DNA of 64,000 nt, taken from NCBI GenBank assembly GCA_047495785.1, contig JBLDXI010000042.1, positions 248,001-312,000 on the forward strand, given 5' to 3'. A program made the position numbers and the translations under genes. Below, in pieces: positions 1 to 63,235 of this stretch. The notes below the pieces were generated by a model. The model ran no database searches. It worked only from the letters and a program-made list of their open reading frames with translations, and was not told the DNA's origin. The DNA is from Lepidodermella squamata. Taxonomy: Eukaryota > Animalia > Gastrotricha. Within the stretch, counting starts at the first letter, position 1. Each line of letters starts with the position of its first letter.

Positions 1-867
1 AGCATCGCTTGTCTTTTTAGGAGCCAATCCACTCGTCATCGAACCTACCAATTGCTTCTTAGCCCTTCTGATACAATCGTAGATTTTGTAGTAGTTCATA
101 GCGAGGAATGAAGCTGGAATGTAAACGGCAGCTGCGTAGTACATCATGATGATGAAGCCCGAGTCCAAATTGCCGACCAAACGGAAGTGATACGGCGCGC
201 AGACCCAAGCAACCCTGCCATCAGGGAACGACAGTAATTCCCGCCGCCATGTCGCATGAGGCCACAAACCGATGAAGACAGGGAGGATAATGCAAGCTAC
301 AACCATCCCAGCGACCACCCCAAGCAGTTTCTTTGTATTAGCTCGGTAATTGGGGCTGTTTGATAGGATGCAAAGCCGGCGTTCGTAGGAAATCAACATC
401 TTCGTGAATGTTCCGAACGCCCCGGTTGCGTAGAGCAGCCAATAGACGCCCTCACAGGTTCGGTCACCCAGGTCCCAGGATCCTGTATTAAGGGTCATCA
501 ATAGCCCTACAGTCTGATCACATGCGAAGAGAATGTTTCGAACGCCATCAATTGTGACCAGCATTAGAAGCTCGCGCTTCACCCCGCGTTTGAAGTAAAT
601 GTAACAGCTCATTGCAGTAGTGAAAATCACAATTATTGATGTAAAGAGGTTCAGCAGAACCCAAGGTAGACGGCTTTCGAAGGTTTCGAGGTAGAAGTTG
701 TGGTACCAGCTGATGAACTGCGGCCGGGGTCCGTTGTAGCCAGCATCGGGCAAGTAAATGCTTATCCAACCATTTTCCAAAAATTCCACTGGCCTTGCAG
801 TTTGATTCAATGCAGCGCGAATCTGCATGGATGTAAAGTTAAAAGTAGAGTTCTGAGTTGAATTCAT
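1..867 (-). CDS. Orphan class A (rhodopsin-like) GPCR, 5' part; 3' end lies beyond window start
   Basis: ATG at 867 (MNSTQNST...). Colinear with no net indel against the intact paralog 11070-12275 (867 maps to 12275, 1 maps to 11409). No stop before the window edge. Confidence 0.85.
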   Translation of the reverse strand, partial: MNSTQNSTFNFTSMQIRAALNQTARPVEFLENGWISIYLPDAGYNGPRPQFISWYHNFYLETFESRLPWVLLNLFTSIIVIFTTAMSCYIYFKRGVKRELLMLVTIDGVRNILFACDQTVGLLMTLNTGSWDLGDRTCEGVYWLLYATGAFGTFTKMLISYERRLCILSNSPNYRANTKKLLGVVAGMVVACIILPVFIGLWPHATWRRELLSFPDGRVAWVCAPYHFRLVGNLDSGFIIMMYYAAAVYIPASFLAMNYYKIYDCIRRAKKQLVGSMTSGLAPKKTSDA

Positions 868-2280
868 TGCGGGAAATAAAAAAACCGGGAATTGAAATGA
901 TCGTCAACTTTCGAGACCTAACAAGGCAGTAAAGCTTATCTGATGCTACGCAAGTGCGTCTAGAGCACTGATCTACTCGAGCTGCGAAAATCCAATTTTT
1001 TTATTAGCCATCTCACCCTAAGATCAGTTTAGCATTGATTTTACGAGAAAGTCTTAATCTTACAGAAATTGTCGTAGCAAAAAAGAGGGAACTTACTTTT
1101 GGCGTAACCAAATTTGACTGTAACGAAACCAAATTTTGGAATCTTCAACGGGCATAAAGCCCATTTTCGAAGCTTTTAGGAATGTCGGCATTTGAGTACC
1201 GAAGTAAACATGATAAGAGTGTGCAACCACATACACGAACAACTCACTTATTATACACGGTCATAACCGGATTTTACAGCTTTGAAAATCGCTTTGAAGT
1301 CGTCCTCGATCTGGAAAAATCCGTCGAAGAGAGTCAAGGATTCAGATTCACGGTGAAAACTTGAACTCCTCTGAAAAATTAACTAGTGGCTGGGGGGAAT
1401 CGGGGGATTTCTACTGTTTTATGACCTATTGTCGATCCTATTATTATTAGACAGAACCCATGGGCATCGATCGTGCGTAGGTCCAAATTTTACCATACGA
1501 TCTACGTACTTATATGGTAAAAGGTGCGATAAGGTCGAGCTCATACAATCTACCCCAGTGTTAAATTGAGATAAAGCCAGGGTCTACTTTTTTAAGACTG
1601 GGCAATGATGTCGTTTGCCAGGCGTGCCTTTCTTCTTGTGGCGAATTCAACGCCGCAATGTGGCAACGCCGTTCGCTAAGTGCTGTCGTTGCGTGAGGAT
1701 GTGTAGACATAGACAACACTGTAACAGATAGGACACCAACGATCTTTCCATAGTGAATTTATTCGAGCTGAATTTGCAAAGAGTGCGGCACGCGATTAAT
1801 TTCAAAGATAATAAAAAAAAAAGCCACAGGTACCACTTTCGAAAATTTCGGGTTTCTGCTCATCAATACTAGAAGCAGCCCTCTTTTCAATGATACCAGG
1901 TACACCTGGTAGTCCCTTATGGATAATTTTCTAAAATTCGCTAAAAAGTGCTATATTCGGTGTTTTTGGCCAAAATTGTCATTCTTCTGCCACGGTTGGC
2001 TCTTTCGGAAAAATTGTGAAACATTTGAAAACGACTTCTTTAAAAGTGAAAATAAATTACAAGAAACGGTGCGCGAAACCCGGCGTTTTAGGTTTAGAGA
2101 TGAAGATCGAGGTCTTGTTGTCGCTGCAAAAAATTGATCTTTGCGTAAACGTGCTTTTTGTGAATGAGATTTTTTGCTGATCGCTGCTAATGAAGATATT
2201 TTATGACCTCCGCACCTCATTAAAAATAAAACGAAAATCAGCCGTTTTATTCGAGCCCCGGCGTCCTAGTACGTCTCATG

Positions 2281-5953: not shown

Positions 5954-6113
5954 TCAAATTCCGAATTGAATAGACAAATTCAGAAGAGCTGCTGCAATTA
6001 ATGACCCTGAGACGTGGGGCGAAGAAGATGTTGCAGCTCGATCTGACGTAGGTGATGGTGCAGCAGATGCTTTCACAGAAGTTGTCGTTGCCGTTGTAGT
6101 TGCCGTTGTAGTG
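5954..6113 (-). pseudogene. 3' half of the interrupted Ly6/three-finger gene: Thr/Ser-rich stalk and GPI-signal-like tail
   Basis: Frame from 6112 reads TTTATTTATTTSVKASAAPSPTSDRAATSSSPHVSGSLIAAALLNLSIQFGI*. In frame with 10030-9288 once the element and one TSD copy are removed. Confidence 0.8.
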
Positions 6114-6154
6114 CATTATGTTTCCGATTTTCCGGGTCAAAGTCCATCGTCATC
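6114..6154 (+). repeat. Left TIR of the RAG1-like transposon, heptamer-like terminus CATTATG
   Basis: Exact reverse complement of 9242-9282. Confidence 0.95.
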
Positions 6155-6273
6155 AAGAGATGAAAGCAGCAGAAAAAAACATGGCTGCGTGGTGACTTGG
6201 TCACTTGTCTGATTCGACGCCTGTTATTGTTAAATAAAAAATCTTTTGCTCCTTTGTATAAATTTTCCGATAC

Positions 6274-7016
6274 ATGTCCGAAAAGAAACATCCTCAACAC
6301 AAACCCGGTCCCTCCGACCTCGGCGATACCGCTAGTAGGCGCAACTCTGAGCATGCGAACATCGCTTCTCAGCAGCAAAGCGCAAGGAGCTTGGCTGTTG
6401 AAAAGAACCGGCACAATTCCGCGCCAGTTGTAACACAAGATATACAAGAAGAGCCTGTGACTCCCGAGGACACAGCGATGGCATCGGCATCGTCATCAGC
6501 TGCATCTTCTAAGTCTACGAATGCTGGAAGAGCTGCGCTGAGAAAAAATCGGCAACATTCCCTAGAAGTGATTGATAATGGCAACATTGATCAGCCGAAT
6601 TTCGAGCCATCTCTGATTGACCGTATTGAGGCGACTGCGAACGAATATAAGAAGTGTAAGCTTTGTTTAATTCCATCCGACTTATTTAATATTTCTGAAA
6701 TTCAGATCACGCTCATCGTGAAAAAGTACCGTGGATATTCGATGAAGAAAACCATTTGCGCCATGCCTTCACCTCGCTGGTTAGGATGAAGAGGATCGAA
6801 GGCTGCACAGCAACAGCGCTGAAATTTTACCTTCGCGAGAACGAGCCGGGATTGTCGAGTAGTCTAGGGCGCACCGAAACAGCCATTGCTAAGCACATCA
6901 GGGTAATCGACGAAAAATTCAAGGCTGGAAAATTTGCTTTCAAATTCTATCGCGAAGATGGCTATGAACTTGTATATGACAGCGAGAGAATGCGTTACAA
7001 AGTCAACAAATTCTGA
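6274..7016 (+). CDS. Transposon ORF2: ~230-aa protein with disordered N-terminus and Myb/SANT-like domain
   Basis: Exons 6274-6655 and 6706-7016 (50-nt GT-AG intron, gtaagc..ttcag) join in frame. Motifs KVPWIFDEENHLRHAF and GRTETAIAKH resemble Myb helices 1 and 3. AATAAA at ~7043 and ~7054. Confidence 0.7.
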
Positions 7017-7130
7017 ATACTTCAGACTGAAGACGAGCATCCAATAAAGAAACAATAAAAGTGATTGATGACATTTCTCTTTTCTCTTTATTTATCTTTA
7101 ATTGGAATTGAAATGATAAGCGCACATTTA

Positions 7131-9007
7131 TCAAAAGAACAAGCTTTCCCGAATATTTACGAGGCCCAGGATTTGTCGCGGAATGGCTGAAGCATTAGTA
7201 GTATTATTCGCAATATCAGAACGCTGCTGTTTCAACATGATTTCTATCGATTCTGTCGACAAGGCGTAAAGATCGATACCTTGATCAAGATATTCGTACA
7301 CGTGCCTGGCAAGAAGATGCGCGTAGGAGGTGACTGGCCCAACAGTTCTTTGCCATGTAGATTCGAAGTTGTAAAGCATCAGTTTTCCTGCTCCAGATCT
7401 CGCCTTTCGCACATCGTCGAAAACCAGTTGCGCCGCGATGAAAAGCCTTCGAACACCGGCTAGCTTTTTCAAAAATCGGTTCTCAGGTTTAGACGAATCG
7501 CGAATGCGGTACATTTTACGAATTTGGCCACGCCAGTCGTCAGGCACAAAAAAAGCTTTCATCAACGGCTCTTGGGCAAGTCTGGTTGAGAAAGCCTTGA
7601 AAGCCTGAAAATTCAATATTTTCAACAGGTATTTCCTCAAGCTCAGAGCTCACCTTGGCAAATCCGTGATGATTGGTATTTTTTATTGTGACGCAAACCT
7701 TGGATCGAACGGTTCTCACATCAACAGTAATATTCGAGGCTTTCACTGACTGTTCAATAAAGCTTTTCAACTGGCGGATTGGGCCTTTCATCTTGAAGTC
7801 ATTCAAATTTTCGAACATCTAATCAGCAAAGTTAATAATAAATTTTATCGTCACAAGTATTCACAAACCGCTTGAAACAGTTTCCTACCAATGTTGATCT
7901 GCATGTGCAAAAAGTCGGGAATAATTATCAACTTTGGGGGGCTCAAATTAATCATTGGTTTGAAGTCTTTGGACCATCCAACTTTCCCTTTCTGATCTGG
8001 CGTGTAAAGATCAAATCGACGTTTTTTCGTTTCTCCAGTAGCGAACTCTGGAATTTTTCGAATGTCCTGAGTGCAAATAACGCAACGACAATGGCTGTTT
8101 TGATGACCACAACCTAACAATTTAACAAGAGCGGGATAGTCCGCGCAAATTATCAACCGAAACAGGTAAGCCGTATTTTTTTCCATCTCGATACCATTTC
8201 TTACGAGATTAACCAGTTCATCGACAGTGGGTTGTAGGTAATTGCGGAAATTTTCACTGGATTCCTTTCCTTTGAAGACTGCCAATTGGTACTCACCATC
8301 GCTGCCCAATTTTCGCTTTCTAGATGGCAAGCAAATATTGGCAGAGATATAACCTTCCGCCATGCTGGTTCTACCACCCATTCCGTCTATTTGAAGTCTG
8401 ATGTCATTGACGCCATTCGAGTTCACCAGGCCTTTTTCGATCCATCCCTTTGCAATTGAGAAAGCTGATCGAAAGGCTACAGCACCGTTATTTAGCTCAG
8501 TTATGTGATGCAAGGCCGATAATTCATTACGCTGCTGGAAGAAGGCTTTTCTCGGAACATCACCAAAGCCGAGCAAGGCTTTCATACCCAACACCTGCCT
8601 GACGTTTAGATTAAATTCCATACCGATTTTCACGAGGCTAAACATGTTTCCTTTAAATTTCAAATAATTGATAAATCGGCGTTCTACCTTCTAGCCCTGT
8701 TCCGTTTTTCCTCAGCTTTGTTGTGATTCTGCTGCAAAAATGGAAACACAATATCAACTGTGCCTATCGACTCATATTCGATTTGCAAACGCGCATTTTT
8801 TATCACTGCGCCATCCATCACACAGCTGAATGGCCAGGTGTGTGGAAGTAGTTCCAGAACTAAACGCTGAGCCAGCTCCGCTCGATTTCTCGCGTGTTTC
8901 TTCGTGAGGCTCGAAACAGGGCCTTTTATACGAGAAATTCTCGCTCTGCAGGTGTAGACTAAATCATCTTGATTAACGCCTTGATCACCTGAATAACGCG
9001 CAGGCAT
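7131..9007 (-). CDS. RAG1/Transib-like DDE transposase (spliced, ~560-570 aa)
   Basis: NBD-like VSSLTKKHARNRAEL; IDGMGG (D at 8385-8387, cf. RAG1 CDGMGD); KGKESSENF; ICADYPAL (D at 8139-8141); CRCVIC; PDFLHMQI; TSYAHLLARH; STESIE (E at 7242-7244). Introns at 7868-7819 and 7653-7605 are in phase. The intron at 8687-8651 needs an extra ~40-nt intron near 8770-8731 (or a frameshift) to stay in frame. Confidence 0.85.
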
Positions 9008-9241
9008 ATTGGATCGTTTAATAAACCTATAAATCGTAAACCGATAAAACACCTCAGCTATTGTATACAACTGCGATCGAGAGAATAACGCTTTCCCTAG
9101 AAATCGGCCAACGAACGGAATTACTACTCTACTATAAATGAATGGGATTAACACTTTTTTGGCACAAATTAATGATTGCGACTCAGCCGCCAGGCGACCA
9201 AGCGACCAAGTCACCAAGTCACCAGCTGCAATTTTTTGCTG

Positions 9242-9282
9242 GATGACGATGGACTTTGACCCGGAAAATCGGAAACATAATG
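9242..9282 (-). repeat. Right TIR of the RAG1-like transposon
   Basis: Exact reverse complement of 6114-6154. Confidence 0.95.
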
Positions 9283-10030
9283 TGGTGGTTGTAGTTCCGC
9301 AATCTACCTTGTTTGCAAGTGCCAAGTCCATTCGCGCGTCATTGCACAAATTACCGCAGCACGTGAAAGTAGTTTGTGACATATAGCCACGGCTGTCTGC
9401 CCGCTTCGCAATATTCGTCCCACAGGTAATATTGCCCAGCGTGCTACAACCCCACACGTAAGTTGAGGCAGGTCCCCTTGAGGTTACGCTGAAATTCGCA
9501 GAAACATCGCCGTAGGCCTTGATGCAAAGCTGTGTCTTTGTACAGTCGACATTAATCGTGTTGTCGGACGGCAAATTTGGCGACATCGAGTCGCCAGTTG
9601 ATACGTAACTCTTACATTGATGCGTGAACACCGGTCGGTCGTTGCAGCGCTGGTCCATCTGCGCGTCGTTGCAGTTATACCCACAGCAGAAGCATGTTCG
9701 CGAGTAGGCCCTTACAACAGTGCCAGCTTCGTTAGTTGCAACTGAGGTTTCGTAAATTCCGTCACAATCTGGCGCGTTTGGCAAGATGCTGACGTCAGTT
9801 GCGTTCCAAACGTAGGAAATCGTTGATATTCTCAACCCGAACGATCCTTGAATATCGACTTGAGCGAAGTTCTTCGAACACAGGAAACCAGTTGACGGGA
9901 AAGTGGCGGAAGAAGAGTCATAAGACAGGCTCGAAGTTCTTGACAGTCCTGTATAGCATTGCAATGCATCTGCAGCAGGAATAATAGCTAGGATTGCAGA
10001 AGCGATGAAACACATTTTAGAAGTATTCAT
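9283..10030 (-). pseudogene. 5' half of a transposon-interrupted Ly6/uPAR-like (three-finger) protein: signal peptide plus two Cys-rich domains
   Basis: MNTSKMCFIASAILAIIPAADA-LQCY signal peptide. Two domains ending CFCCGYNCND and FTCCGNLCND (CCxxxCN-type hallmark). Broken in the Thr run. Reconstructed ORF is 300 aa. Confidence 0.8.
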
Positions 10031-11069: not shown

Positions 11070-12275
11070 TTAAGCAGGGGCTACAAGCGAGCGATTAACA
11101 AATCTGTAGTATTTCCGCTGAAGCCATTCCATAATCGGTTTTGTCCAGCCGGGCTTGATCATGAGCACGCAATTTCCAACAACCATTTCCAAAATAATAC
11201 AATACGGCGATACTTTTCCCAAAATTGGATCGACCAATTGCAGCCCGAAATCATACCAAAAATGCTCCATGACAAACGCGAATAGCGCTGGAATGTGGAA
11301 TGTTACGTAGATGAAGAAAACAGCTACAGATTGCTGGGCGAAGAACACCTCACGAGCCCGCCATTCCGCTAGCTTTTCCGCCAGAGATTTCTGCTGCAAG
11401 TTCGAAGAAGCATCACTTTTTTTAGACGGAGCCGATCCACTCGTGTTCGAGCCAACCATTTGCTTCTTAGCCCGCCTGATACAATCGTAGATTTTGTAGT
11501 AGTTCATAGCTAGAAATGAGGCTGGGATGTAAACTGCAGCGGCGTAGTACATCATTAGGATAAAGCCCGAGTCCAAATTGCCGACCAAACGGAAGTGATA
11601 CGGTCCGCAGACCCAGGCGACCCGGCCATCAGGGAATGACAATAATTCCCTTCGCCATGACGCATGAGGCCACAGACCGATGAAAACAGGGGTGATAATG
11701 CAAGCTACAACCATTCCCGCCACCATTCCTAATAGCTTCTTGGTATTAGCTCGGTAGTTAGGGCTGTTTGATAGGATGCAAAGCCGGCGTTCGTAGGAAA
11801 TCAGCATTTTCGTGAAAGTACCGAATGCGCCTGTAGCGTAGAGCAGCCAATAAACCCCTTCGCAAGTCCGGTCGCCCAGATCCCAGGATCCTGTATTTAG
11901 GGTCATCAATAGCCCTACAGTGTGGTCACAAGCGAAGAGAATGTTTCGAACTCCATCGATTGCGACCAGCATTAGCAGCTCCCGTTTCACCCCGCGTTTG
12001 TAGTAGATGTAGCAGCTCAATGTAGTAGTGAATATCACGATTATCGAAGTGATGAGGTATAGCAGAACCCACGATAGGCGGCTTTCGAAAGTTTCGAGAT
12101 AGAAGTTGTGGTACCAGCTGATGAATTGCGGTCTAGGTCCGTCGTAGCCTGCATCGGGTAGGTAAATGCTTACCCAACCATTCTCCAAAAACTTCACCGG
12201 CCTCCCAGTTCGATTCAATGCAGCGCCTCGCTGCACGGATGTCGAGTTTAGAGTAGAGTTCTGAGTTGAATTCAT
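11070..12275 (-). CDS. Orphan class A (rhodopsin-like) GPCR, intronless, 401 aa
   Basis: N-glycosylation-rich N-terminus, seven hydrophobic segments, ECL1 GSWDLGDRTC, TM3 end ISYERR (DRY-like), ECL2 Cys. Confidence 0.85.
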   Translation of the reverse strand: MNSTQNSTLNSTSVQRGAALNRTGRPVKFLENGWVSIYLPDAGYDGPRPQFISWYHNFYLETFESRLSWVLLYLITSIIVIFTTTLSCYIYYKRGVKRELLMLVAIDGVRNILFACDHTVGLLMTLNTGSWDLGDRTCEGVYWLLYATGAFGTFTKMLISYERRLCILSNSPNYRANTKKLLGMVAGMVVACIITPVFIGLWPHASWRRELLSFPDGRVAWVCGPYHFRLVGNLDSGFILMMYYAAAVYIPASFLAMNYYKIYDCIRRAKKQMVGSNTSGSAPSKKSDASSNLQQKSLAEKLAEWRAREVFFAQQSVAVFFIYVTFHIPALFAFVMEHFWYDFGLQLVDPILGKVSPYCIILEMVVGNCVLMIKPGWTKPIMEWLQRKYYRFVNRSLVAPA

Positions 12276-58745: not shown

Positions 58746-59450
58746 ATGACTTCAACCCGTAATTTAGAGTTTACCATTAAGCTCACCAGCGCGGAAGAAT
58801 TTCCGCACTGGAAGCGTCGTTTGCGCGCGATTGCTCTCAAAGCGAATTGCTGGGAGGTAATGATAGATGAGACTAAGTCTAAAAATTCGGCTAACGCGGA
58901 GCTGTGTAAAACGGCTTATGCGATGATCATGACGTCTGTCTCTGACGATTTGTTGCATCTAATACCTGAAGATATTGACAATCCTCAGGTCGCCTTCAAA
59001 GCGCTTACCGACCACTTTCAGCCCTCTACTAATGTAACCAAAAGTACGCTGAAACAACGCTTAACGGTTACGCGGATGCGAGCGAGCGATCGTATTGATG
59101 AGCACGTTTCTCGCTTAAAAATTTTATTTTCGCGACTTGGCGCAATAAATTCTCCTGTTTCTGAAGATGATAAATTGCTTGCTCTCACGTCTAGCGTGCA
59201 CCCAAAATATTGGCACGTACTGACCGCCATCGAAATGGCCAAAGGGGAGTCGCTAACGTTTGATGGGTTGTATCAAGCGCTAGTGGCAGAGGAACTCCGC
59301 CTCAATCTCCGGGTCGGATCGAAGACGGTCGGGGAAGGTTCTCCGCTTTCTGACGCTGCCACAGCATTCCGTGCGACTTATGCTCGAAAATTTCAAGGCA
59401 CTTGTAATTTCTGTGGTATCTATGGTCACAAGGAAGCGGATTGTTTCAAA
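58746..59450 (+). CDS. gag: Copia Gag (to the CCHC zinc knuckle)
   Basis: F..WK..L..I N-terminus; CNFCGIYGHKEADC knuckle; coding continues in the -1 frame. Confidence 0.88.
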
Positions 59451-62400
59451 AAGAGATCCACTCAAATTCAAAAAATCGGAACCATCAAAATCGATATCAA
59501 AATTCGTCCCCGTCCCGTTCTCATTCCCAAGGCAACAGAAGGAACAATGGCAAAAAGCATTTCAAATCTCCAAAGAATGCACACTTTGCGCAAAACCAAA
59601 ACGTCGGTTTAATGATGATTTCGGGATTAATCGGATCAACATATGGTGGGGATTTCAAGCACTTGTGGGTGGTTGATAGTGGGGCTTCCGATCACATGAC
59701 GAACAATCGCGAAAATTTGCTTGATTATCACCCATTTTCTTCACCAAAATTGATCACCATTGGGGACGGAAATTCTGTTGAAGCACTCGGTGAGGGCAAA
59801 ATTCAATTTCAAGCTGGCAAGAAAGAGATTACCCTGAATCGTGTTTTGTACATTCCTAACATTGCAGCCAATCTGATGAGTGTCCCATCGGTTATGCGTT
59901 CCGGGGGCTCTGTTAAATTCAAGGGGTCAACTTGCCATGTGAAGGGACCCAGTGGGGCCTTATTGGTGGTAGCTAAACTGGATGGGGGTTTGATGGTTCT
60001 CCCATGGTTACCCAAGACGAATTTTTCTTTTGTGGCAAATGATAATTCTCATAATTTGTTGTGGCATCGTCGTCTTGGCCATACTAACCATGCTACTGCT
60101 CGTTTCATGTGTGATCACGACTGTGTGGAGGGACTTGAATACAAGAAACAAGAACTTGGTTTCTGTGAAAGCTGTGTAAAAGCTAAAATTCATCGTTTGC
60201 CGCATCCTCCACGCGAAATACTTGCCGCGCGAAAATTTGAACGCGTTCATTCCGATATCTGTGGACCCATGCCGGTCGAATCTTTTGGTAGAAAACGCTA
60301 TTTATTGATTTTCATCGATGATTATTCGCGCTATGCATTCCCATATTTTATTCGCTCCCGCTCTGAAGTTTTTGCGAAGTATAAAGAGTTTGAAGCGATG
60401 GTACAGCGTCAATTCGGTTGCCAAATAGGCATTTTTCGCTGCGACGGCGCAAAAGAGTATCTTTCCGAAGAATTCTCGGCGCATCTTAGAGCTCAAGGCA
60501 CGCTTAGAGAATACACTGTTGCCCATACTCCGCAGCATAACTCTGTCGCCGAACGCTATTTTCGCACTGTTACTGAAATGACGCGCGCTATGCTTATTCA
60601 CGCCTATATGCCAAAACGTTTTTGGGCTGATGGCTATGCTGTTGCTGTGTATTTGCGGAATCGCATTTTGACGCGCGCTACGGGTAAAACGCCCTATGAA
60701 CTGCTTTATGATGCTGTTCCCAGTTTGAAGCATCTTAAGGTTTTTGGCTGTAAAGCATTCGCGCATGTTGTTGAACGTTTTCGTGATCGTTTTGATGCTA
60801 AAGCTCGCGAGATGATTTTTGTTGGATATGCCACCGAACAATTCGGCTACAGATTGTTCGATCCGACTAATTCGAAATTTTATGTGCGACGGGACGTCAC
60901 ATTCAATGAAGATGATTTCTATTACAAGCCTGATGAGCCTACTGTTGTTGTGACTCCGAATTATCTCGATGATTTTGATGATTTTCCACCCGCCGGTGCG
61001 GCTTCCGGGGGTGATACTAACGATTTGAATGCCACCACGGCAACAACTCCTGCTGAACTTAATGCTTCTGATCTAACATCTCGTGATTCTGCTTCAGGGG
61101 ATGATTTTGATTTCGTTCCTACTTCTCATTTGTCGAATTCAACCGACAATATTGCTGAACTTGAGCGCGATGTAGCCAACACTGTGATTGTGTCTGCGCA
61201 ACCCGAGGGGCTTCCTGATCCTCCTCGGCGCAAACCAGGTCGTCCGCGCAAGATTCCTCCTGGCCAGAGGTCCGTGCATGACGTTTATGTGAAAAAGAAG
61301 GCGGCAGCTAAGCCTTCCCTGCGCGTACAGCCTGCTCGTACTTGCAAGAAATCTTCCTCGGTGTCCCCTGCCGAGGCTACTAACCATTCATTTAACCATG
61401 TTAACGAAGATGACGATTTACCTTCGGCTCATGCTTTTCTTACCGTTGCTTGCCCTGAAGAGCCACGTACGTACGCTGAAGCGATTGCTAGCCCTGATTC
61501 TGATAAATGGCTTGCGGCTATGCAAGACGAAATGCGTTCTCACGCTGAGCATGGTACCTATGTTTTGATTCCGCGCCCTTCTGGCGAATCTACCGTGGGG
61601 TGTAAGTGGGTACTGCGTATCAAGCGCAAAGCTGATGGCACTGTTGAGCGCTATAAGGCTCGGCTCGTTGCGCAAGGATTCACGCAGCGCTACGGCGAAA
61701 ATTATCTGGATACTTACTCTCCCGTTGTGCGTTATGCTTCCATTCGTGCTGTTATTAGTTTTGCGATTTCCCAGGATATGATTCTGTGGCAATGCGATGT
61801 TAAGACTGCGTATTTAAACAGCGATGCCGATTTTCGCATTTTAATGGAGCAGCCACCCGGTTTTATTGAGGGTGATCTTCTTCCTAATGGCAAAACTGCT
61901 CTTTGTTGCCTAATCCGTCGCGGAATTTACGGCTTACGCCAAAGTGGTCGCCTATGGCACCTCAAATTTTCCTCTGTCTTGTTATCTCTTGGTTTTACTC
62001 GTTCTATGGCTGACCCATCCGTTTTTATTTACCGCGTGGATGGTCTTTGCATTTTGACCGTGTTTGTGGATGATATTTTGGCTGCTTGTTCTTCTCAAGA
62101 GGTTCTTGATAAGCTGAAATCCATGCTTACCGCGCATTTTTCCATTTCTGATCTTGGTCCGCTCTCTTTTTTACTTGGCGTGCATTTTACTCGCTCGAAA
62201 GATTGCATTTACCTTAATCAACGCCAATATCTCCTCAAGATTCTGGAGCGTTTTGGTCTTGCGGATGCTAACCCTGTTTCTACTCCTTGCGATACTAACC
62301 ATTTGTTACCGAGCGATGCTTACGCTCGTTCCGTCGACAAAAAGCTTTTCCAGCAGATGGTTGGAAGTTTGCTCTATGCGTCGACATCTACGCGGCCTGA

Positions 62401-63235
62401 CATTGCGTATGCTCTTAGTAACGTTGCGCAATTTGCCGCGAATCCCAACACTCACCACAGGACTGCTCTCAAACGCATATTTCGGTACCTAAAAGGTACG
62501 CTCGATTTTTCGCTGTGCTATTCCGCTACTCAGCCTGCACAACTCACTGGCTTCTGCGATGCGAGTTGGGGGGGTGAGGTTGATCGCCGTTCGACCACCG
62601 GTTACGTCTTTACATTTAGCGGTGGTCCGGTCGCTTGGTGCTCCAAGAAACAGCGCTCTGTTGCCCTCTCATCTGCAGAAGCAGAGTACATAGCTTTTGC
62701 ATCTGCGTGCCAAGAAGCCATGTGGTTGCGACAACTGTTTTTTGATTTTTCTCCACTCTCGTCGCCTACAATAATTCACACCGATAATCTGTCTGCTAAA
62801 AGTATTGCAGAAAATCAAGTTGTAAGCGCTCGATCCAAGCATATTGACATTCGTTTACATTTTTGCCGCGATTTGATTGAGAAAAAGGTGATCAAGCCTG
62901 AATGGATGAGCACTCAAGAAATGCCCGCTGATTTACTAACAAAAAGTTTGCCAAAAGCCCGATTTTCCACGCTCTCTTCACGTTTACTCGAAAAATCTAT
63001 GAAAAGTTTTTTGATTTTTGCGTTTCTAACAAGTTTCATGTTCTTACCTGTTGCATCTCAGAACATGACGATGCAGTACATAACGAACACAATTAACACA
63101 ACTAATAGCGCTCCTAGAAGCGCCCATTTCGCTTTTCTCACACTATCCGACACAACGACTACACGTGGTAGAAGTTGCACAAGTTTACACAAGTTGCATC
63201 CTACTTCTACGAACTGGCCGTTAAAAATGGCGTAG
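59441..63235 (+). CDS. pol: Copia Pol (PR-IN-RT-RNaseH) with a C-terminal extension
   Basis: WVVDSGASDH, LWHRRLGH..CESC, VHSDICGP, YKARLVAQGF, FVDDIL, ADLLTK. Confidence 0.93.
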   Translation: MFQKEIHSNSKNRNHQNRYQNSSPSRSHSQGNRRNNGKKHFKSPKNAHFAQNQNVGLMMISGLIGSTYGGDFKHLWVVDSGASDHMTNNRENLLDYHPFSSPKLITIGDGNSVEALGEGKIQFQAGKKEITLNRVLYIPNIAANLMSVPSVMRSGGSVKFKGSTCHVKGPSGALLVVAKLDGGLMVLPWLPKTNFSFVANDNSHNLLWHRRLGHTNHATARFMCDHDCVEGLEYKKQELGFCESCVKAKIHRLPHPPREILAARKFERVHSDICGPMPVESFGRKRYLLIFIDDYSRYAFPYFIRSRSEVFAKYKEFEAMVQRQFGCQIGIFRCDGAKEYLSEEFSAHLRAQGTLREYTVAHTPQHNSVAERYFRTVTEMTRAMLIHAYMPKRFWADGYAVAVYLRNRILTRATGKTPYELLYDAVPSLKHLKVFGCKAFAHVVERFRDRFDAKAREMIFVGYATEQFGYRLFDPTNSKFYVRRDVTFNEDDFYYKPDEPTVVVTPNYLDDFDDFPPAGAASGGDTNDLNATTATTPAELNASDLTSRDSASGDDFDFVPTSHLSNSTDNIAELERDVANTVIVSAQPEGLPDPPRRKPGRPRKIPPGQRSVHDVYVKKKAAAKPSLRVQPARTCKKSSSVSPAEATNHSFNHVNEDDDLPSAHAFLTVACPEEPRTYAEAIASPDSDKWLAAMQDEMRSHAEHGTYVLIPRPSGESTVGCKWVLRIKRKADGTVERYKARLVAQGFTQRYGENYLDTYSPVVRYASIRAVISFAISQDMILWQCDVKTAYLNSDADFRILMEQPPGFIEGDLLPNGKTALCCLIRRGIYGLRQSGRLWHLKFSSVLLSLGFTRSMADPSVFIYRVDGLCILTVFVDDILAACSSQEVLDKLKSMLTAHFSISDLGPLSFLLGVHFTRSKDCIYLNQRQYLLKILERFGLADANPVSTPCDTNHLLPSDAYARSVDKKLFQQMVGSLLYASTSTRPDIAYALSNVAQFAANPNTHHRTALKRIFRYLKGTLDFSLCYSATQPAQLTGFCDASWGGEVDRRSTTGYVFTFSGGPVAWCSKKQRSVALSSAEAEYIAFASACQEAMWLRQLFFDFSPLSSPTIIHTDNLSAKSIAENQVVSARSKHIDIRLHFCRDLIEKKVIKPEWMSTQEMPADLLTKSLPKARFSTLSSRLLEKSMKSFLIFAFLTSFMFLPVASQNMTMQYITNTINTTNSAPRSAHFAFLTLSDTTTTRGRSCTSLHKLHPTSTNWPLKMA

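What the first reader, a model, noticed from the sequence alone, without database searches (positions are those of the whole stretch)
6114..9282. Complete two-gene RAG1/Transib-like transposon with heptamer-like ends and a 5-bp TSD
Seen: perfect 41-bp TIRs, 5-bp TSD (4/5), and a spliced transposase carrying the full RAG1-core motif set in order: NBD-like SLTKKHARNR, DGMG, second Asp in ADY, CxxC, DFLH, HxxxxH, STESIE. Established: these correspond to mouse RAG1 D600/D708/E962 and Zn ligands C727/C730/H937/H942; RAG/Transib make 5-bp TSDs; ProtoRAG ends begin CACTATG and its two genes are tail-to-tail. Here the ends begin CATTATG and the two genes are also tail-to-tail, 114 bp apart. Inference: a young, possibly active and possibly undescribed lineage of the RAG/Transib radiation.
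Basis: partly seen in the sequence, partly recalled or inferred. Interest (0 to 1): 0.92.

Follow-up and report, generated by a model that had tools for sequence, protein, structure and literature searches.

The report
Young two-gene RAG1-fold DNA transposon
A real, intact and recently mobile 3.2-kb cut-and-paste jumping gene sits inside a surface-protein gene. Its enzyme shares the fold and catalytic/zinc motifs of the antibody-gene recombinase RAG1, but the whole CACTA-Mirage-Chapaev-Transib clade has those. It duplicates 2 bp rather than 5, and its partner gene is not RAG2-like, so it is a rare new lineage of a known kind and not a shown RAG/Transib element.

Summary
The element is real: 3,169 bp (6114-9282), 44-nt TIRs (41 perfect, 43/44), CATTATG...CATAATG ends. 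It carries an intact 575-aa transposase in four exons (- strand) and an intact 230-aa partner gene (+ strand), tail-to-tail and 114 bp apart.

The 5-bp TSD does not hold. An element-free contig in a public run reads exactly as left flank plus right flank minus one TG, so the duplication is 2 bp.

The enzyme's best solved-structure matches are RAG1, HzTransib and BbRAG1L (Z 9.6-7.4, next 5.8). Predicted CACTA and Chapaev-type models match equally well. The motif set is the published signature of the whole CMCT clade. No direct sequence hit to RAG1 or Transib exists; the only Pfam hit is sub-threshold Transposase_21 (CACTA).

The nearest full-length relatives are an unannotated mollusc/cnidarian/sponge family (hhalign E 1e-16). 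That family does hit RAG1 and RAG1L by sequence, and a bona fide CMC control family does not. Placement inside CMCT therefore stays open.

The partner is a small helical protein, conserved in a 40%-identical relative, and not RAG2-like. Near-identical copies, deletion derivatives and the empty site show recent mobility. The scan has already found sister elements elsewhere in this genome.

The parts
6112..6113 (.). left copy of the 2-bp target-site duplication (TG)
   Evidence: flank letters; element-free contig lacks exactly one TG
6114..6157 (+). left terminal inverted repeat, begins CATTATG
   Evidence: 44 nt, 98%; first 41 identical
6190..6223 (.). left subterminal repeat block (8-mer CCAAGTCA-like units, inverted relative to the right block)
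   Evidence: pairs I2/I5; kept in the ~217-bp deletion derivative (joint 6226->9179)
6274..6655 (+). partner gene exon 1 (low-complexity, Ser/acidic-rich N-terminal half)
6656..6705 (+). partner gene intron, 50 nt, GT..AG
6706..7016 (+). partner gene exon 2 with stop; conserved C-terminal domain (4 helices + 3-strand sheet)
   Evidence: (30% id to convergent gene in L005, E 7e-9)
7017..7130 (.). 114-bp spacer between the two stop codons, AATAAA at 7043 and 7054 (+) and 7087-7092 (-)
7131..7604 (-). transposase exon 4 with stop: HLLARH (ZnH2-type) and catalytic Glu in STESIE
7654..7818 (-). transposase exon 3
7869..8637 (-). transposase exon 2: DGMG (Asp 1), CADY (Asp 2), CVIC (ZnC2-type), PDFLH
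8688..9007 (-). transposase exon 1 (start ATG at 9007), family-specific N-terminal region
9190..9224 (.). right subterminal repeat block (four tandem 8-mers CCAGGCGA / CCAAGCGA / CCAAGTCA / CCAAGTCA)
9239..9282 (-). right terminal inverted repeat, ends CATAATG
   Evidence: three other copies leave the window sequence exactly after 9282
9283..9284 (.). right copy of the 2-bp target-site duplication (TG)
9285..10030 (-). host gene, upstream part (signal peptide, Cys-rich domains, start of Thr stalk)
   Evidence: joining to 6113 restores a 301-aa ORF
5954..6113 (-). host gene, downstream part (Thr/Ala stalk, hydrophobic GPI-like tail, stop)

Best explanation
This is an autonomous, recently active cut-and-paste DNA transposon. 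It belongs to a rare two-gene family that is a lineage of its own within the CMCT clade (CACTA/EnSpm, Mirage, Chapaev, Transib+RAG1).

The 575-aa transposase has an RNase H-like DDE core: the Asp in QIDGMG, the Asp in CADY and the Glu in STESIE. It also carries a C2 (CVIC) plus H2 (HLLARH) zinc module inserted as in RAG1.

Inferred mechanism: the transposase binds the 44-bp TIRs, which have CA...TG termini, and excises the element. It reinserts it with strand transfers staggered by 2 bp, which gives a TG duplication here.

The 230-aa partner protein is encoded tail-to-tail and conserved in a relative whose transposase is 37-43% identical (partner 30%). It is most likely an accessory DNA-binding or assembly factor. 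It may read the inverted 8-mer blocks about 80-110 bp inside each end, much as TnpA does for En/Spm. This role is inferred, not shown.

This copy landed in the Thr-stalk exon of a secreted Cys-rich surface-protein gene and is polymorphic.

The family's nearest detectable relatives are an unannotated mollusc/cnidarian/sponge transposase family. That family carries a weak direct sequence link to RAG1/RAG1L. The branch may therefore lie nearer the RAG1 side of the clade than CACTA does, but it is not shown to be Transib or RAG-like.
For: 2-bp TSD and recent mobility:
- an element-free junction lacking exactly one TG;
- 153 contigs laid, 81 of them >=99% identical;
- three other flanks beginning right after 9282;
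- deletion derivatives at 6226->9179, 8448->9202 and 8558->9151.

Family rarity and conservation:
- 12 hits in 1.84e9 proteins;
- full-length collinear relatives at 37-43% identity, with introns 1 and 2 in the same places;
- a convergent partner homologue in L005.

Fold:
- Foldseek finds RAG1 at E 3.5e-4;
- VIA gives RAG1 Z 9.6 (211 residues aligned, RAG1 473-812), HzTransib 8.2, BbRAGL 7.8, and the next unrelated chain 5.8;
- predicted models of Chapaev-type (DUF1280), CACTA (Transposase_21+DUF4218) and RAG1 clusters match equally, TM 0.61/0.58/0.55.

Sequence:
- Pfam gives only Transposase_21, E 7.4e-5, below its cutoff;
- hhalign of the family against the marine-invertebrate family A2 gives E 9.8e-17 over 233 columns, and 2.6e-15 over 393 columns for the full length;
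- hhalign against the bona fide CMC family A3 gives 6.2e-10 over 111 columns;
- the A2 profile hits RAG1 at 3.5e-8 and BbRAG1L at 1.8e-5, whereas the A3 profile and the family's own profile hit nothing.

Against: - No RNA evidence exists for the splice model or for expression.
- The empty-site reading rests on two short contigs with only 10 unaligned letters, in a repeat region. They could come from an allele or a paralogue.
- No second copy with both flanks was recovered, so the family-wide TSD was not measured here.
- The partner's function is unsupported by any fold or family match.
- No phylogeny with named Transib, Chapaev or Mirage references could be built, so 'lineage of its own' is an argument from profile scores.
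Confidence: 0.6

Rival explanations
1. The element is a true member or sister of the Transib/RAG lineage, a RAG1-like transposon whose TSD has shifted to 2 bp and whose partner stands in RAG2's place. It would cut by nick and hairpin as HzTransib, ProtoRAG and RAG do.
For: - The best solved-structure matches are RAG1, HzTransib and BbRAGL, with a clear gap to the next fold.
- The catalytic and zinc residues have RAG1's exact spacings: D->C 19 and 22, H->E 20.
- The nearest full-length relatives (A2) hit RAG1 and RAG1L by plain hmmsearch, and 4 of 21 hit Pfam RAG1. The CMC control family does not.
- ESM features put RAG1 clusters at 0.96 for exon 2 and RAG1_ZnH2 at 0.93 for exon 4.
- A 2026 preprint reports 3-bp and TA TSDs inside a Transib sub-lineage, so TSD length alone cannot exclude Transib (10.64898/2026.08.26.747230).
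Against: - No direct sequence hit to RAG1, RAG1L or HzTransib was found at E<=10 with the protein or its family profile. No Pfam RAG1 hit was found either. The only Pfam hit is CACTA-type.
- A2 itself does not hit HzTransib.
- CACTA and Chapaev-type models fit the fold equally well, and the CMC family has the same D->C spacing.
- The TSD is 2 bp.
- The terminus is CAT, not the conserved CAC (PMC7204232).
- The partner is a 230-aa helical protein with no Kelch or propeller signal.
- The ESM recognition score for exon 4 is below the reliable range.
Confidence: 0.2
2. The element is a divergent member of the classical CMC group, Mirage- or CACTA-like. It would be a 2-bp-TSD element with a transposase plus a TnpA-like end-binding second protein and subterminal repeats.
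For: - The 2-bp TSD and CA...TG termini fit the CMC range of 2-4 bp (10.64898/2026.08.26.747230; PMC12730594). A 2-bp TSD is the Mirage value in Repbase (own knowledge).
- The only Pfam hit is Transposase_21.
- hhalign to an arthropod DUF4218/Transposase_21 family gives E 6.2e-10.
- The nearest single full-length HMMER hit, P0010, is of that family.
- The two-gene layout and subterminal repeats recall En/Spm (own knowledge).
Against: - Profile similarity to the CMC family is weaker and shorter (111 or 74 columns) than to A2 (233 or 393 columns).
- No member hits DUF1258 (Mirage) or DUF4218. DUF1280 (Chapaev) appears only at E 0.037 in one member.
- The Pfam score of 22.5 bits is under the 28.6 cutoff.
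Confidence: 0.15
3. This copy is an immobile relic or a domesticated gene pair, not a working transposon.
For: No transcript evidence. Activity was not tested.
Against: - The TIRs are nearly perfect, and both ORFs are intact with poly(A) signals.
- It interrupts a host coding exon that is otherwise intact.
- An element-free version, many >=99% copies and internal-deletion derivatives occur in the same run.
Confidence: 0.05

Closest known systems
CMCT clade of DNA transposons (CACTA/EnSpm, Mirage, Chapaev, Transib, plus Plavaka, ESTA, Lanisha; Kojima 2025, PMC12730594)
   Same: It has a DDE core with C(2)C and H(3-4)H between the second Asp and the Glu. It has 5'-CA..TG-3' termini and a TSD within the 2-5 bp range. 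Profile homology to both a CMC family and a RAG1-linked family is significant.
   Different: It fits no named lineage by Pfam or HMMER, and only 12 relatives turned up in 1.84e9 proteins. It carries a conserved small partner gene.
Transib transposons, RAG1, and RAGL transposons such as ProtoRAG (PMC1131882, PMC7204232)
   Same: The fold of the pre-RNase H, RNase H and ZnC2 region matches at Z 9.6-7.4. The DGMG motif is identical, and the spacings of the catalytic and zinc residues are identical. It has two convergent genes between TIRs, as in RAGL transposons.
   Different: The TSD is 2 bp, not 5. The terminus is CAT..., not CAC.... No direct sequence similarity was found. The partner is a 230-aa helical protein, not a Kelch-propeller RAG2L. 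The claimed NBD-like motif is not conserved within the family.
Mirage (DUF1258) and CACTA/En-Spm (Transposase_21, DUF4218) elements
   Same: The TSD length of 2 bp is the Mirage value (own knowledge). It gives a sub-threshold Transposase_21 hit. It has subterminal short repeats and a second protein, as in En/Spm (own knowledge).
   Different: No DUF1258 or DUF4218 hit was found. Homology to a bona fide CMC family is weaker than to the A2 family. The second protein comes from a separate convergent gene, whereas in En/Spm it comes from alternative splicing of the same transcript.
Unannotated transposase family of molluscs, cnidarians and a sponge (A2; P0011 and 74 relatives)
   Same: This is the best profile match: E 9.8e-17 to 2.6e-15, collinear from upstream of Asp 1 to beyond the catalytic Glu, with all motif columns aligned.
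   Different: Identity is about 20%. A2 proteins are single long ORFs of 600-860 aa, often with a C-terminal SAP domain. No partner gene or TIRs were seen in two contigs. A2 hits RAG1 and RAG1L directly; the window family does not.
Sister two-gene 'RAG1-fold' elements noted by this scan elsewhere in the same genome (s1-365904, s1-398000, s1-373975, s1-410272, s1-421954, s1-421454)
   Same: By those notes they share CAT...ATG or CATTATG ends, a 2-bp TSD, a tail-to-tail small partner gene and a CMCT-type verdict.
   Different: They lie at different loci and have different sizes (3.3-4.9 kb). I could not compare the sequences, because the look-up by sequence returned nothing.

Membership tests
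Transib / RAG1-RAGL transposons | Transposase significantly similar in sequence to RAG1 core or Transib (Pfam RAG1, or solved RAG1/RAG1L/HzTransib chains) | tested here: not met
   No Pfam RAG1 hit for any exon or family member at E<=1. phmmer and the family profile found 0 RAG or Transib chains in the PDB at E<=10. The only link is transitive, through family A2.
Transib / RAG1-RAGL transposons | 5-bp target-site duplication | tested here: not met
   The element-free junction lacks exactly one TG, so the TSD is 2 bp (flanks). Caveat: one locus and short contigs. A preprint also reports non-5-bp TSDs in one Transib sub-lineage.
Transib / RAG1-RAGL transposons | TIRs beginning with the RSS-heptamer-like CAC (CACAATG / CACTATG-like) | tested here: not met
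   The termini are CATTATG: the third base is T, and 5 of 7 match CACAATG. PMC7204232 states that the first 3 bp, CAC, are conserved.
Transib / RAG1-RAGL transposons | RAG1-type fold: pre-RNase H + RNase H DDE + ZnC2/ZnH2 | tested here: met
   RAG1 Z 9.6, HzTransib 8.2, BbRAGL 7.8, next 5.8; Foldseek E 3.5e-4. The feature is not exclusive: CACTA and Chapaev-type models fit equally well. Only exon 2 was folded.
Transib / RAG1-RAGL transposons | RAG2-like (Kelch propeller) partner gene, convergent (RAGL transposons only) | tested here: not met
   The convergent layout is present. The partner, however, is 230 aa with no Pfam hit. Its conserved domain is 4 helices + 3 strands with no PDB or atlas match.
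Transib / RAG1-RAGL transposons | Phylogenetic placement within the Transib+RAG1 clade | not testable with these tools
   No Transib, RAG1 or Chapaev reference sequences could be obtained.
Transib / RAG1-RAGL transposons | Cleavage by nick and hairpin on the flanking DNA | not testable with these tools
   This needs biochemistry or excision footprints.
CMCT clade (PMC12730594) | [quoted passage not shown] | tested here: met
   CADY..CVIC..HLLARH..STESIE are conserved across the family. They align column for column with A2 and, through A2, with RAG1.
CMCT clade (PMC12730594) | 5'-CA..TG-3' termini and a 2-5 bp TSD | tested here: met
   CATTATG...CATAATG ends and a 2-bp TG duplication.
CMC proper (CACTA / Mirage / Chapaev) | Pfam Transposase_21, DUF1258, DUF1280 or DUF4218 at or above the gathering score | tested here: not met
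   Transposase_21 scores 22.5 bits against a 28.6 cutoff. DUF1280 appears at E 0.037 in one relative. There is no DUF1258 or DUF4218 hit.
CMC proper (CACTA / Mirage / Chapaev) | Profile-level homology to a bona fide CMC transposase family | tested here: met
   hhalign against the arthropod DUF4218/Transposase_21 family gives E 6.2e-10 over 111 columns. This is weaker than against A2.
Autonomous, currently mobile transposon | Intact genes and ends, near-identical copies, insertion polymorphism | tested here: met
   (intact genes and ends). (81 contigs >=99% identical, other flanks, empty site, deletion derivatives).
Autonomous, currently mobile transposon | Transcription and correct splicing of both genes | not testable with these tools
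   No RNA run holds the element.

The most novel reading that the evidence does not exclude
Together with the unannotated mollusc/cnidarian/sponge family, this two-gene family may form a so-far unnamed deep branch on the RAG1/Transib side of the CMCT clade. It would be a RAG1-fold transposase that works with a small sequence-specific partner and makes 2-bp staggered insertions. That would be an independent example of a RAG1-type enzyme recruiting an accessory subunit, and a living intermediate between CMC and Transib/RAG.
Probability: 0.2. Interest if true: 0.75.

Novelty: new variant of a known kind. Interest (0 to 1): 0.45.

Why it matters
RAG1's origin is traced to Transib-type transposons, but the deeper links between Transib/RAG1 and the CACTA-Mirage-Chapaev group are poorly sampled.

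This is a young, intact and apparently mobile element. Its transposase has RAG1's fold and residue spacings, and it carries its own conserved partner gene. That offers a tractable system for three questions:
- how RAG1-type enzymes use accessory subunits;
- how the stagger of strand transfer (2 versus 5 bp) is set;
- what lies between CMC and Transib.

It also shows that the RAG1 motif set and a best PDB match to RAG1 do not identify a RAG/Transib element. That matters for reading the many similar calls in this genome.

Tried and rejected
- **Word-indexed search.** The protein search with exon 2 gave nothing (a length filter applies).
- **PDB by sequence.** Searches with exon 2 and with the family profile gave nothing.
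- **Spliced protein.** The full 575-aa protein has no reference, so it could not be handed to the fold or search tools. Only the exon-2 ORF and the partner's exon 2 were folded.
- **RNA support.** No RNA run was found.
- **More copies or relatives with both ends.** Relatives' contigs are cut before the far TIR.
- **A2 elements.** No TIRs were found in L009 or L010.
- **Findings look-up by sequence.** It returned nothing.
- **Partner as Myb/SANT.** This rests only on ESM-feature leads (0.88). Pfam gave nothing. Foldseek gave E>=0.3. The best VIA Z was 5.5, among generic three-helix domains. Atlas TM was <0.5. I left it as an unproven lead.
- **'NBD-like SLTKKHARNR'.** Relatives read L-K-K-A-N-A, L-V-K-K-A-A and L-T-E-R-S-I at this position, and the N-terminal 140 aa align with neither A2 nor RAG1. 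I rejected it as evidence.
- **X2 contig ending at 6113.** Only 33 aligned bases lie in the repeat, and the contig's continuation differs from the right flank. It is probably a paralogue and was not used for the TSD.
- **Subterminal 8-mer.** It is not enriched window-wide (11 against 6.9 expected). Only its clustering at both ends is notable.
Full report
**Observation**

The element is as described, except for the duplication.
- Inverted repeats lie at 6114-6157 and 9239-9282 (44 nt, one mismatch). The first 41 bases are identical.
- The terminal 32-mer occurs only at these two places in the window, against 0 in shuffles.
- The ends read CATTATG...CATAATG.

On the - strand, four exons (9007-8688, 8637-7869, 7818-7654, 7604-7131) join into an uninterrupted 575-codon frame. 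The introns are 50, 50 and 49 nt, all GT..AG.

On the + strand, 6274-6655 and 6706-7016 give a 230-aa protein with a 50-nt intron.

The two stop codons are 114 bp apart. The spacer holds AATAAA on both strands.

No RNA run holds the element, so the splice model is not confirmed by transcripts. However, tblastn against relatives on metagenome contigs breaks at the same residues (106/107 and 364). The four-member family alignment is collinear across the junctions.

**Target-site duplication**

The flanks are ...GTTGTAGTG | element | TGGTGGTTG.... A 2-bp pair (TG/TG) is perfect.

The target is a Thr-codon repeat, so chance resemblance is high and an empty site is needed.

Reads were laid once, on 4,401 bases. 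Two contigs of run X1 align from 9282 rightward and carry TGCCGTTGTA just before it. The contig therefore reads as the left flank through 6113 followed by 9285 onward.
- Between the two GTTG landmarks, the filled site has 10 bases and this contig has 8.
- A 2-bp duplication predicts 8. A 5-bp duplication predicts 5.

Removing the element and one TG also restores a 301-aa ORF. That protein has a signal peptide, Cys-rich domains, a Thr/Ala stalk and a hydrophobic tail. A 3-nt difference would keep the frame too, so the base count is the discriminating fact, not the frame.

Caveats: only 10 unaligned letters are seen, from two contigs, and they may come from an allele or a paralogue. Another X1 contig shows a diverged, element-free version of the gene (joint 6069->9296 with 13 other letters). 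A contig of run X2 that stops at 6113 was judged too weak to use.

**Recent mobility**
- 153 X1 contigs lie on the stretch, and 81 are at least 99% identical.
- Three contigs leave the window sequence exactly after 9282 into unrelated flanks, which fixes the element's end.
- Word depth over the right TIR bin is about four to six times that of its neighbours.
- Internal-deletion derivatives exist (8448->9202, 8558->9151).
- A roughly 217-bp derivative (6226->9179) keeps only 113 and 104 bp of the two ends.

These retained ends include the TIRs and, about 80-110 bp inside, inverted blocks of an 8-mer. The right block holds CCAGGCGA/CCAAGCGA/CCAAGTCA/CCAAGTCA, and the left block has the matching reverse-complement units. 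The 8-mer is not enriched window-wide. Only its clustering at both ends is notable.

**The transposase**

An exhaustive HMMER search of 1.84 billion representative proteins with the exon-2 ORF found 12 hits.
- Six are close fragments (39-49% identity) on short metagenome contigs.
- Two are distant full-length proteins, P0010 and P0011.

Pfam gives only Transposase_21 (the CACTA tnp2 family) at E 7.4e-5, under its cutoff. It gives no RAG1 hit for any exon or relative. Neither the protein nor its family profile matches any solved chain by sequence, even at E 10.

An AlphaFold model of the exon-2 ORF (pLDDT 66.8) matches RAG1 first.
- Foldseek gives E 3.5e-4.
- VIA-align gives RAG1 Z 9.6 with 211 residues on RAG1 473-812, HzTransib 8.2 and BbRAGL 7.8. 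The next, unrelated chain is at 5.8.

No CMC transposase has been solved, so this test cannot separate RAG/Transib from its sister groups. Against predicted structures, the model fits three kinds of cluster equally: a DUF1280-bearing cluster (TM 0.61), plant Transposase_21+DUF4218 clusters (0.58) and RAG1 clusters (0.55). Language-model features give the same picture: DUF1280 0.97, RAG1 0.96, Transposase_21 0.93. By Majorek et al. (PMC3985635), DUF1280 is Chapaev, DUF1258 is Mirage and Transposase_21 is CACTA.

**Placement by profiles**

P0011 belongs to an unannotated family of 75 proteins from molluscs, cnidarians and a sponge (alignment A2). P0010 belongs to a large arthropod family that UniRef names DUF4218 or transposase-domain proteins. 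It is a bona fide CMC family (alignment A3).

| Comparison | Result |
|---|---|
| Window family vs A2 (hhalign) | E 9.8e-17, 233 columns |
| Window family, full-length spliced alignment, vs A2 (hhalign) | E 2.6e-15, 393 columns, from upstream of Asp 1 past the Glu |
| Window family vs A3 (hhalign) | E 6.2e-10, 111 columns |
| A2 vs A3 (hhalign) | E 4.2e-10, 343 columns |
| A2 profile vs PDB (hmmsearch) | RAG1 3.5e-8, BbRAG1L 1.8e-5, not HzTransib |
| A2 members vs Pfam | 4 of 21 touch Pfam RAG1 |
| A3 profile vs PDB | nothing |

All three families are therefore homologous. The window family is nearest to A2, and A2 is the one with a direct link to RAG1.

The printed alignments combined with hhalign map the residues as follows:
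- QIDGMG onto RAG1's Asp-600 motif;
- the Asp of CADY onto Asp 708;
- CVIC onto Cys 727/730, with the same 19 and 22 residue spacing;
- HLLARH onto His 937/942;
- the second Glu of STESIE onto Glu 962, with the same 20-residue spacing.

The CMC control family has the same Asp-to-Cys spacing, so this too is clade-wide.

**The partner**

The C-terminal 100 residues are 28-30% identical to a convergent gene downstream of the transposase relative in L005. That relative's transposase is only 37-43% identical, so the two-gene layout is conserved and under constraint.

The domain is modelled as four helices plus a three-stranded sheet (pLDDT 77). It has no Pfam family. It also has no convincing structural match: Foldseek E 0.3 or worse, best VIA Z 5.5 among generic three-helix DNA-binding domains, atlas TM under 0.5.

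A Myb-type reading rests only on feature scores of 0.88. It is not RAG2-like.

**Comparison with what is known**

Kojima (PMC12730594) states that EnSpm/CACTA, Mirage, Chapaev, Transib and RAG1 all share C(2)C and H(3-4)H between the second Asp and the Glu. They also share 5'-CA..TG-3' termini and 2-5 bp TSDs, and he names this the CMCT clade.

RAGL transposons are defined by four features (PMC7204232): convergent RAG1L-RAG2L genes, TIRs beginning CAC, 5-bp TSDs, and clear RAG1/RAG2 sequence similarity. Here only the convergent layout and the fold are met.

A 2026 preprint (10.64898/2026.08.26.747230) shows 3-bp and TA duplications within one Transib sub-lineage. It argues that TSD length should not override transposase phylogeny. 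The 2-bp TSD therefore lowers the Transib reading but does not exclude it. A tree with named references could not be built here.

**Verdict**

This is a real, intact, recently mobile two-gene DNA transposon of a rare, apparently undescribed lineage within the CMCT clade.
- It works like a RAG1-fold DDE transposase.
- It is not shown to be a Transib/RAG element, and it fails three of that group's defining features.

The scan has already reported sister elements with CAT...ATG ends, 2-bp TSDs and small partners elsewhere in this genome. My results agree with those notes.

My results add three things:
- an empty-site test for this copy;
- the deletion derivatives that define the retained ends;
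- the finding that the nearest full-length relatives are a RAG1-linked marine-invertebrate family, not classical CMC.

Noticed in passing
window 5954-6113 and 9285-10030 (- strand): The interrupted host gene encodes a 301-aa secreted, Cys-rich protein with a Thr/Ala stalk and a hydrophobic GPI-like tail. The ORF is restored exactly when the element and one TG are removed. It has no Pfam family.
   Followed up: partly
window 25500-51939, both strands: Six long ORFs (531-778 aa) each carry an ANF_receptor ligand-binding domain. They form a tandem receptor gene family with very long exons.
   Followed up: no
window 59441-63235 (+): A 1,264-aa Ty1/copia-type pol ORF (gag_pre-integrs, rve, RVT_2) appears intact.
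   Followed up: no
window 11070-12275 (-): A 401-aa ORF with a rhodopsin-family 7TM receptor domain.
   Followed up: no
proteins P0011, P0014-P0087 (alignment A2); loci L009, L010: This is a large transposase family of molluscs, cnidarians and a sponge that Pfam does not annotate. Some members have a C-terminal SAP domain. Its profile hits RAG1 (3.5e-8) and BbRAG1L (1.8e-5) by plain hmmsearch but not HzTransib. Its named lineage, TIRs and TSD are unknown.
   Followed up: partly
window 9274-9282, another copy in run X1: One contig continues after 9274 as CATAATTTTATTT..., so that copy's terminus reads CATAAT+T where this copy has CATAATG. Unresolved.
   Followed up: no
L005:1233-3167 (-) and 426-1016 (-): Beside the relative's transposon lie a 644-aa and a 196-aa ORF with no Pfam family. 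They are presumably host genes of an unidentified soil animal.
   Followed up: no
run X2 (organism B), on window 6129-6352 and 9309-9483: A second sample or organism holds the element's left end at about 96% identity and the host gene flank at about 98% identity. The family therefore occurs in a close relative or another strain.
   Followed up: no
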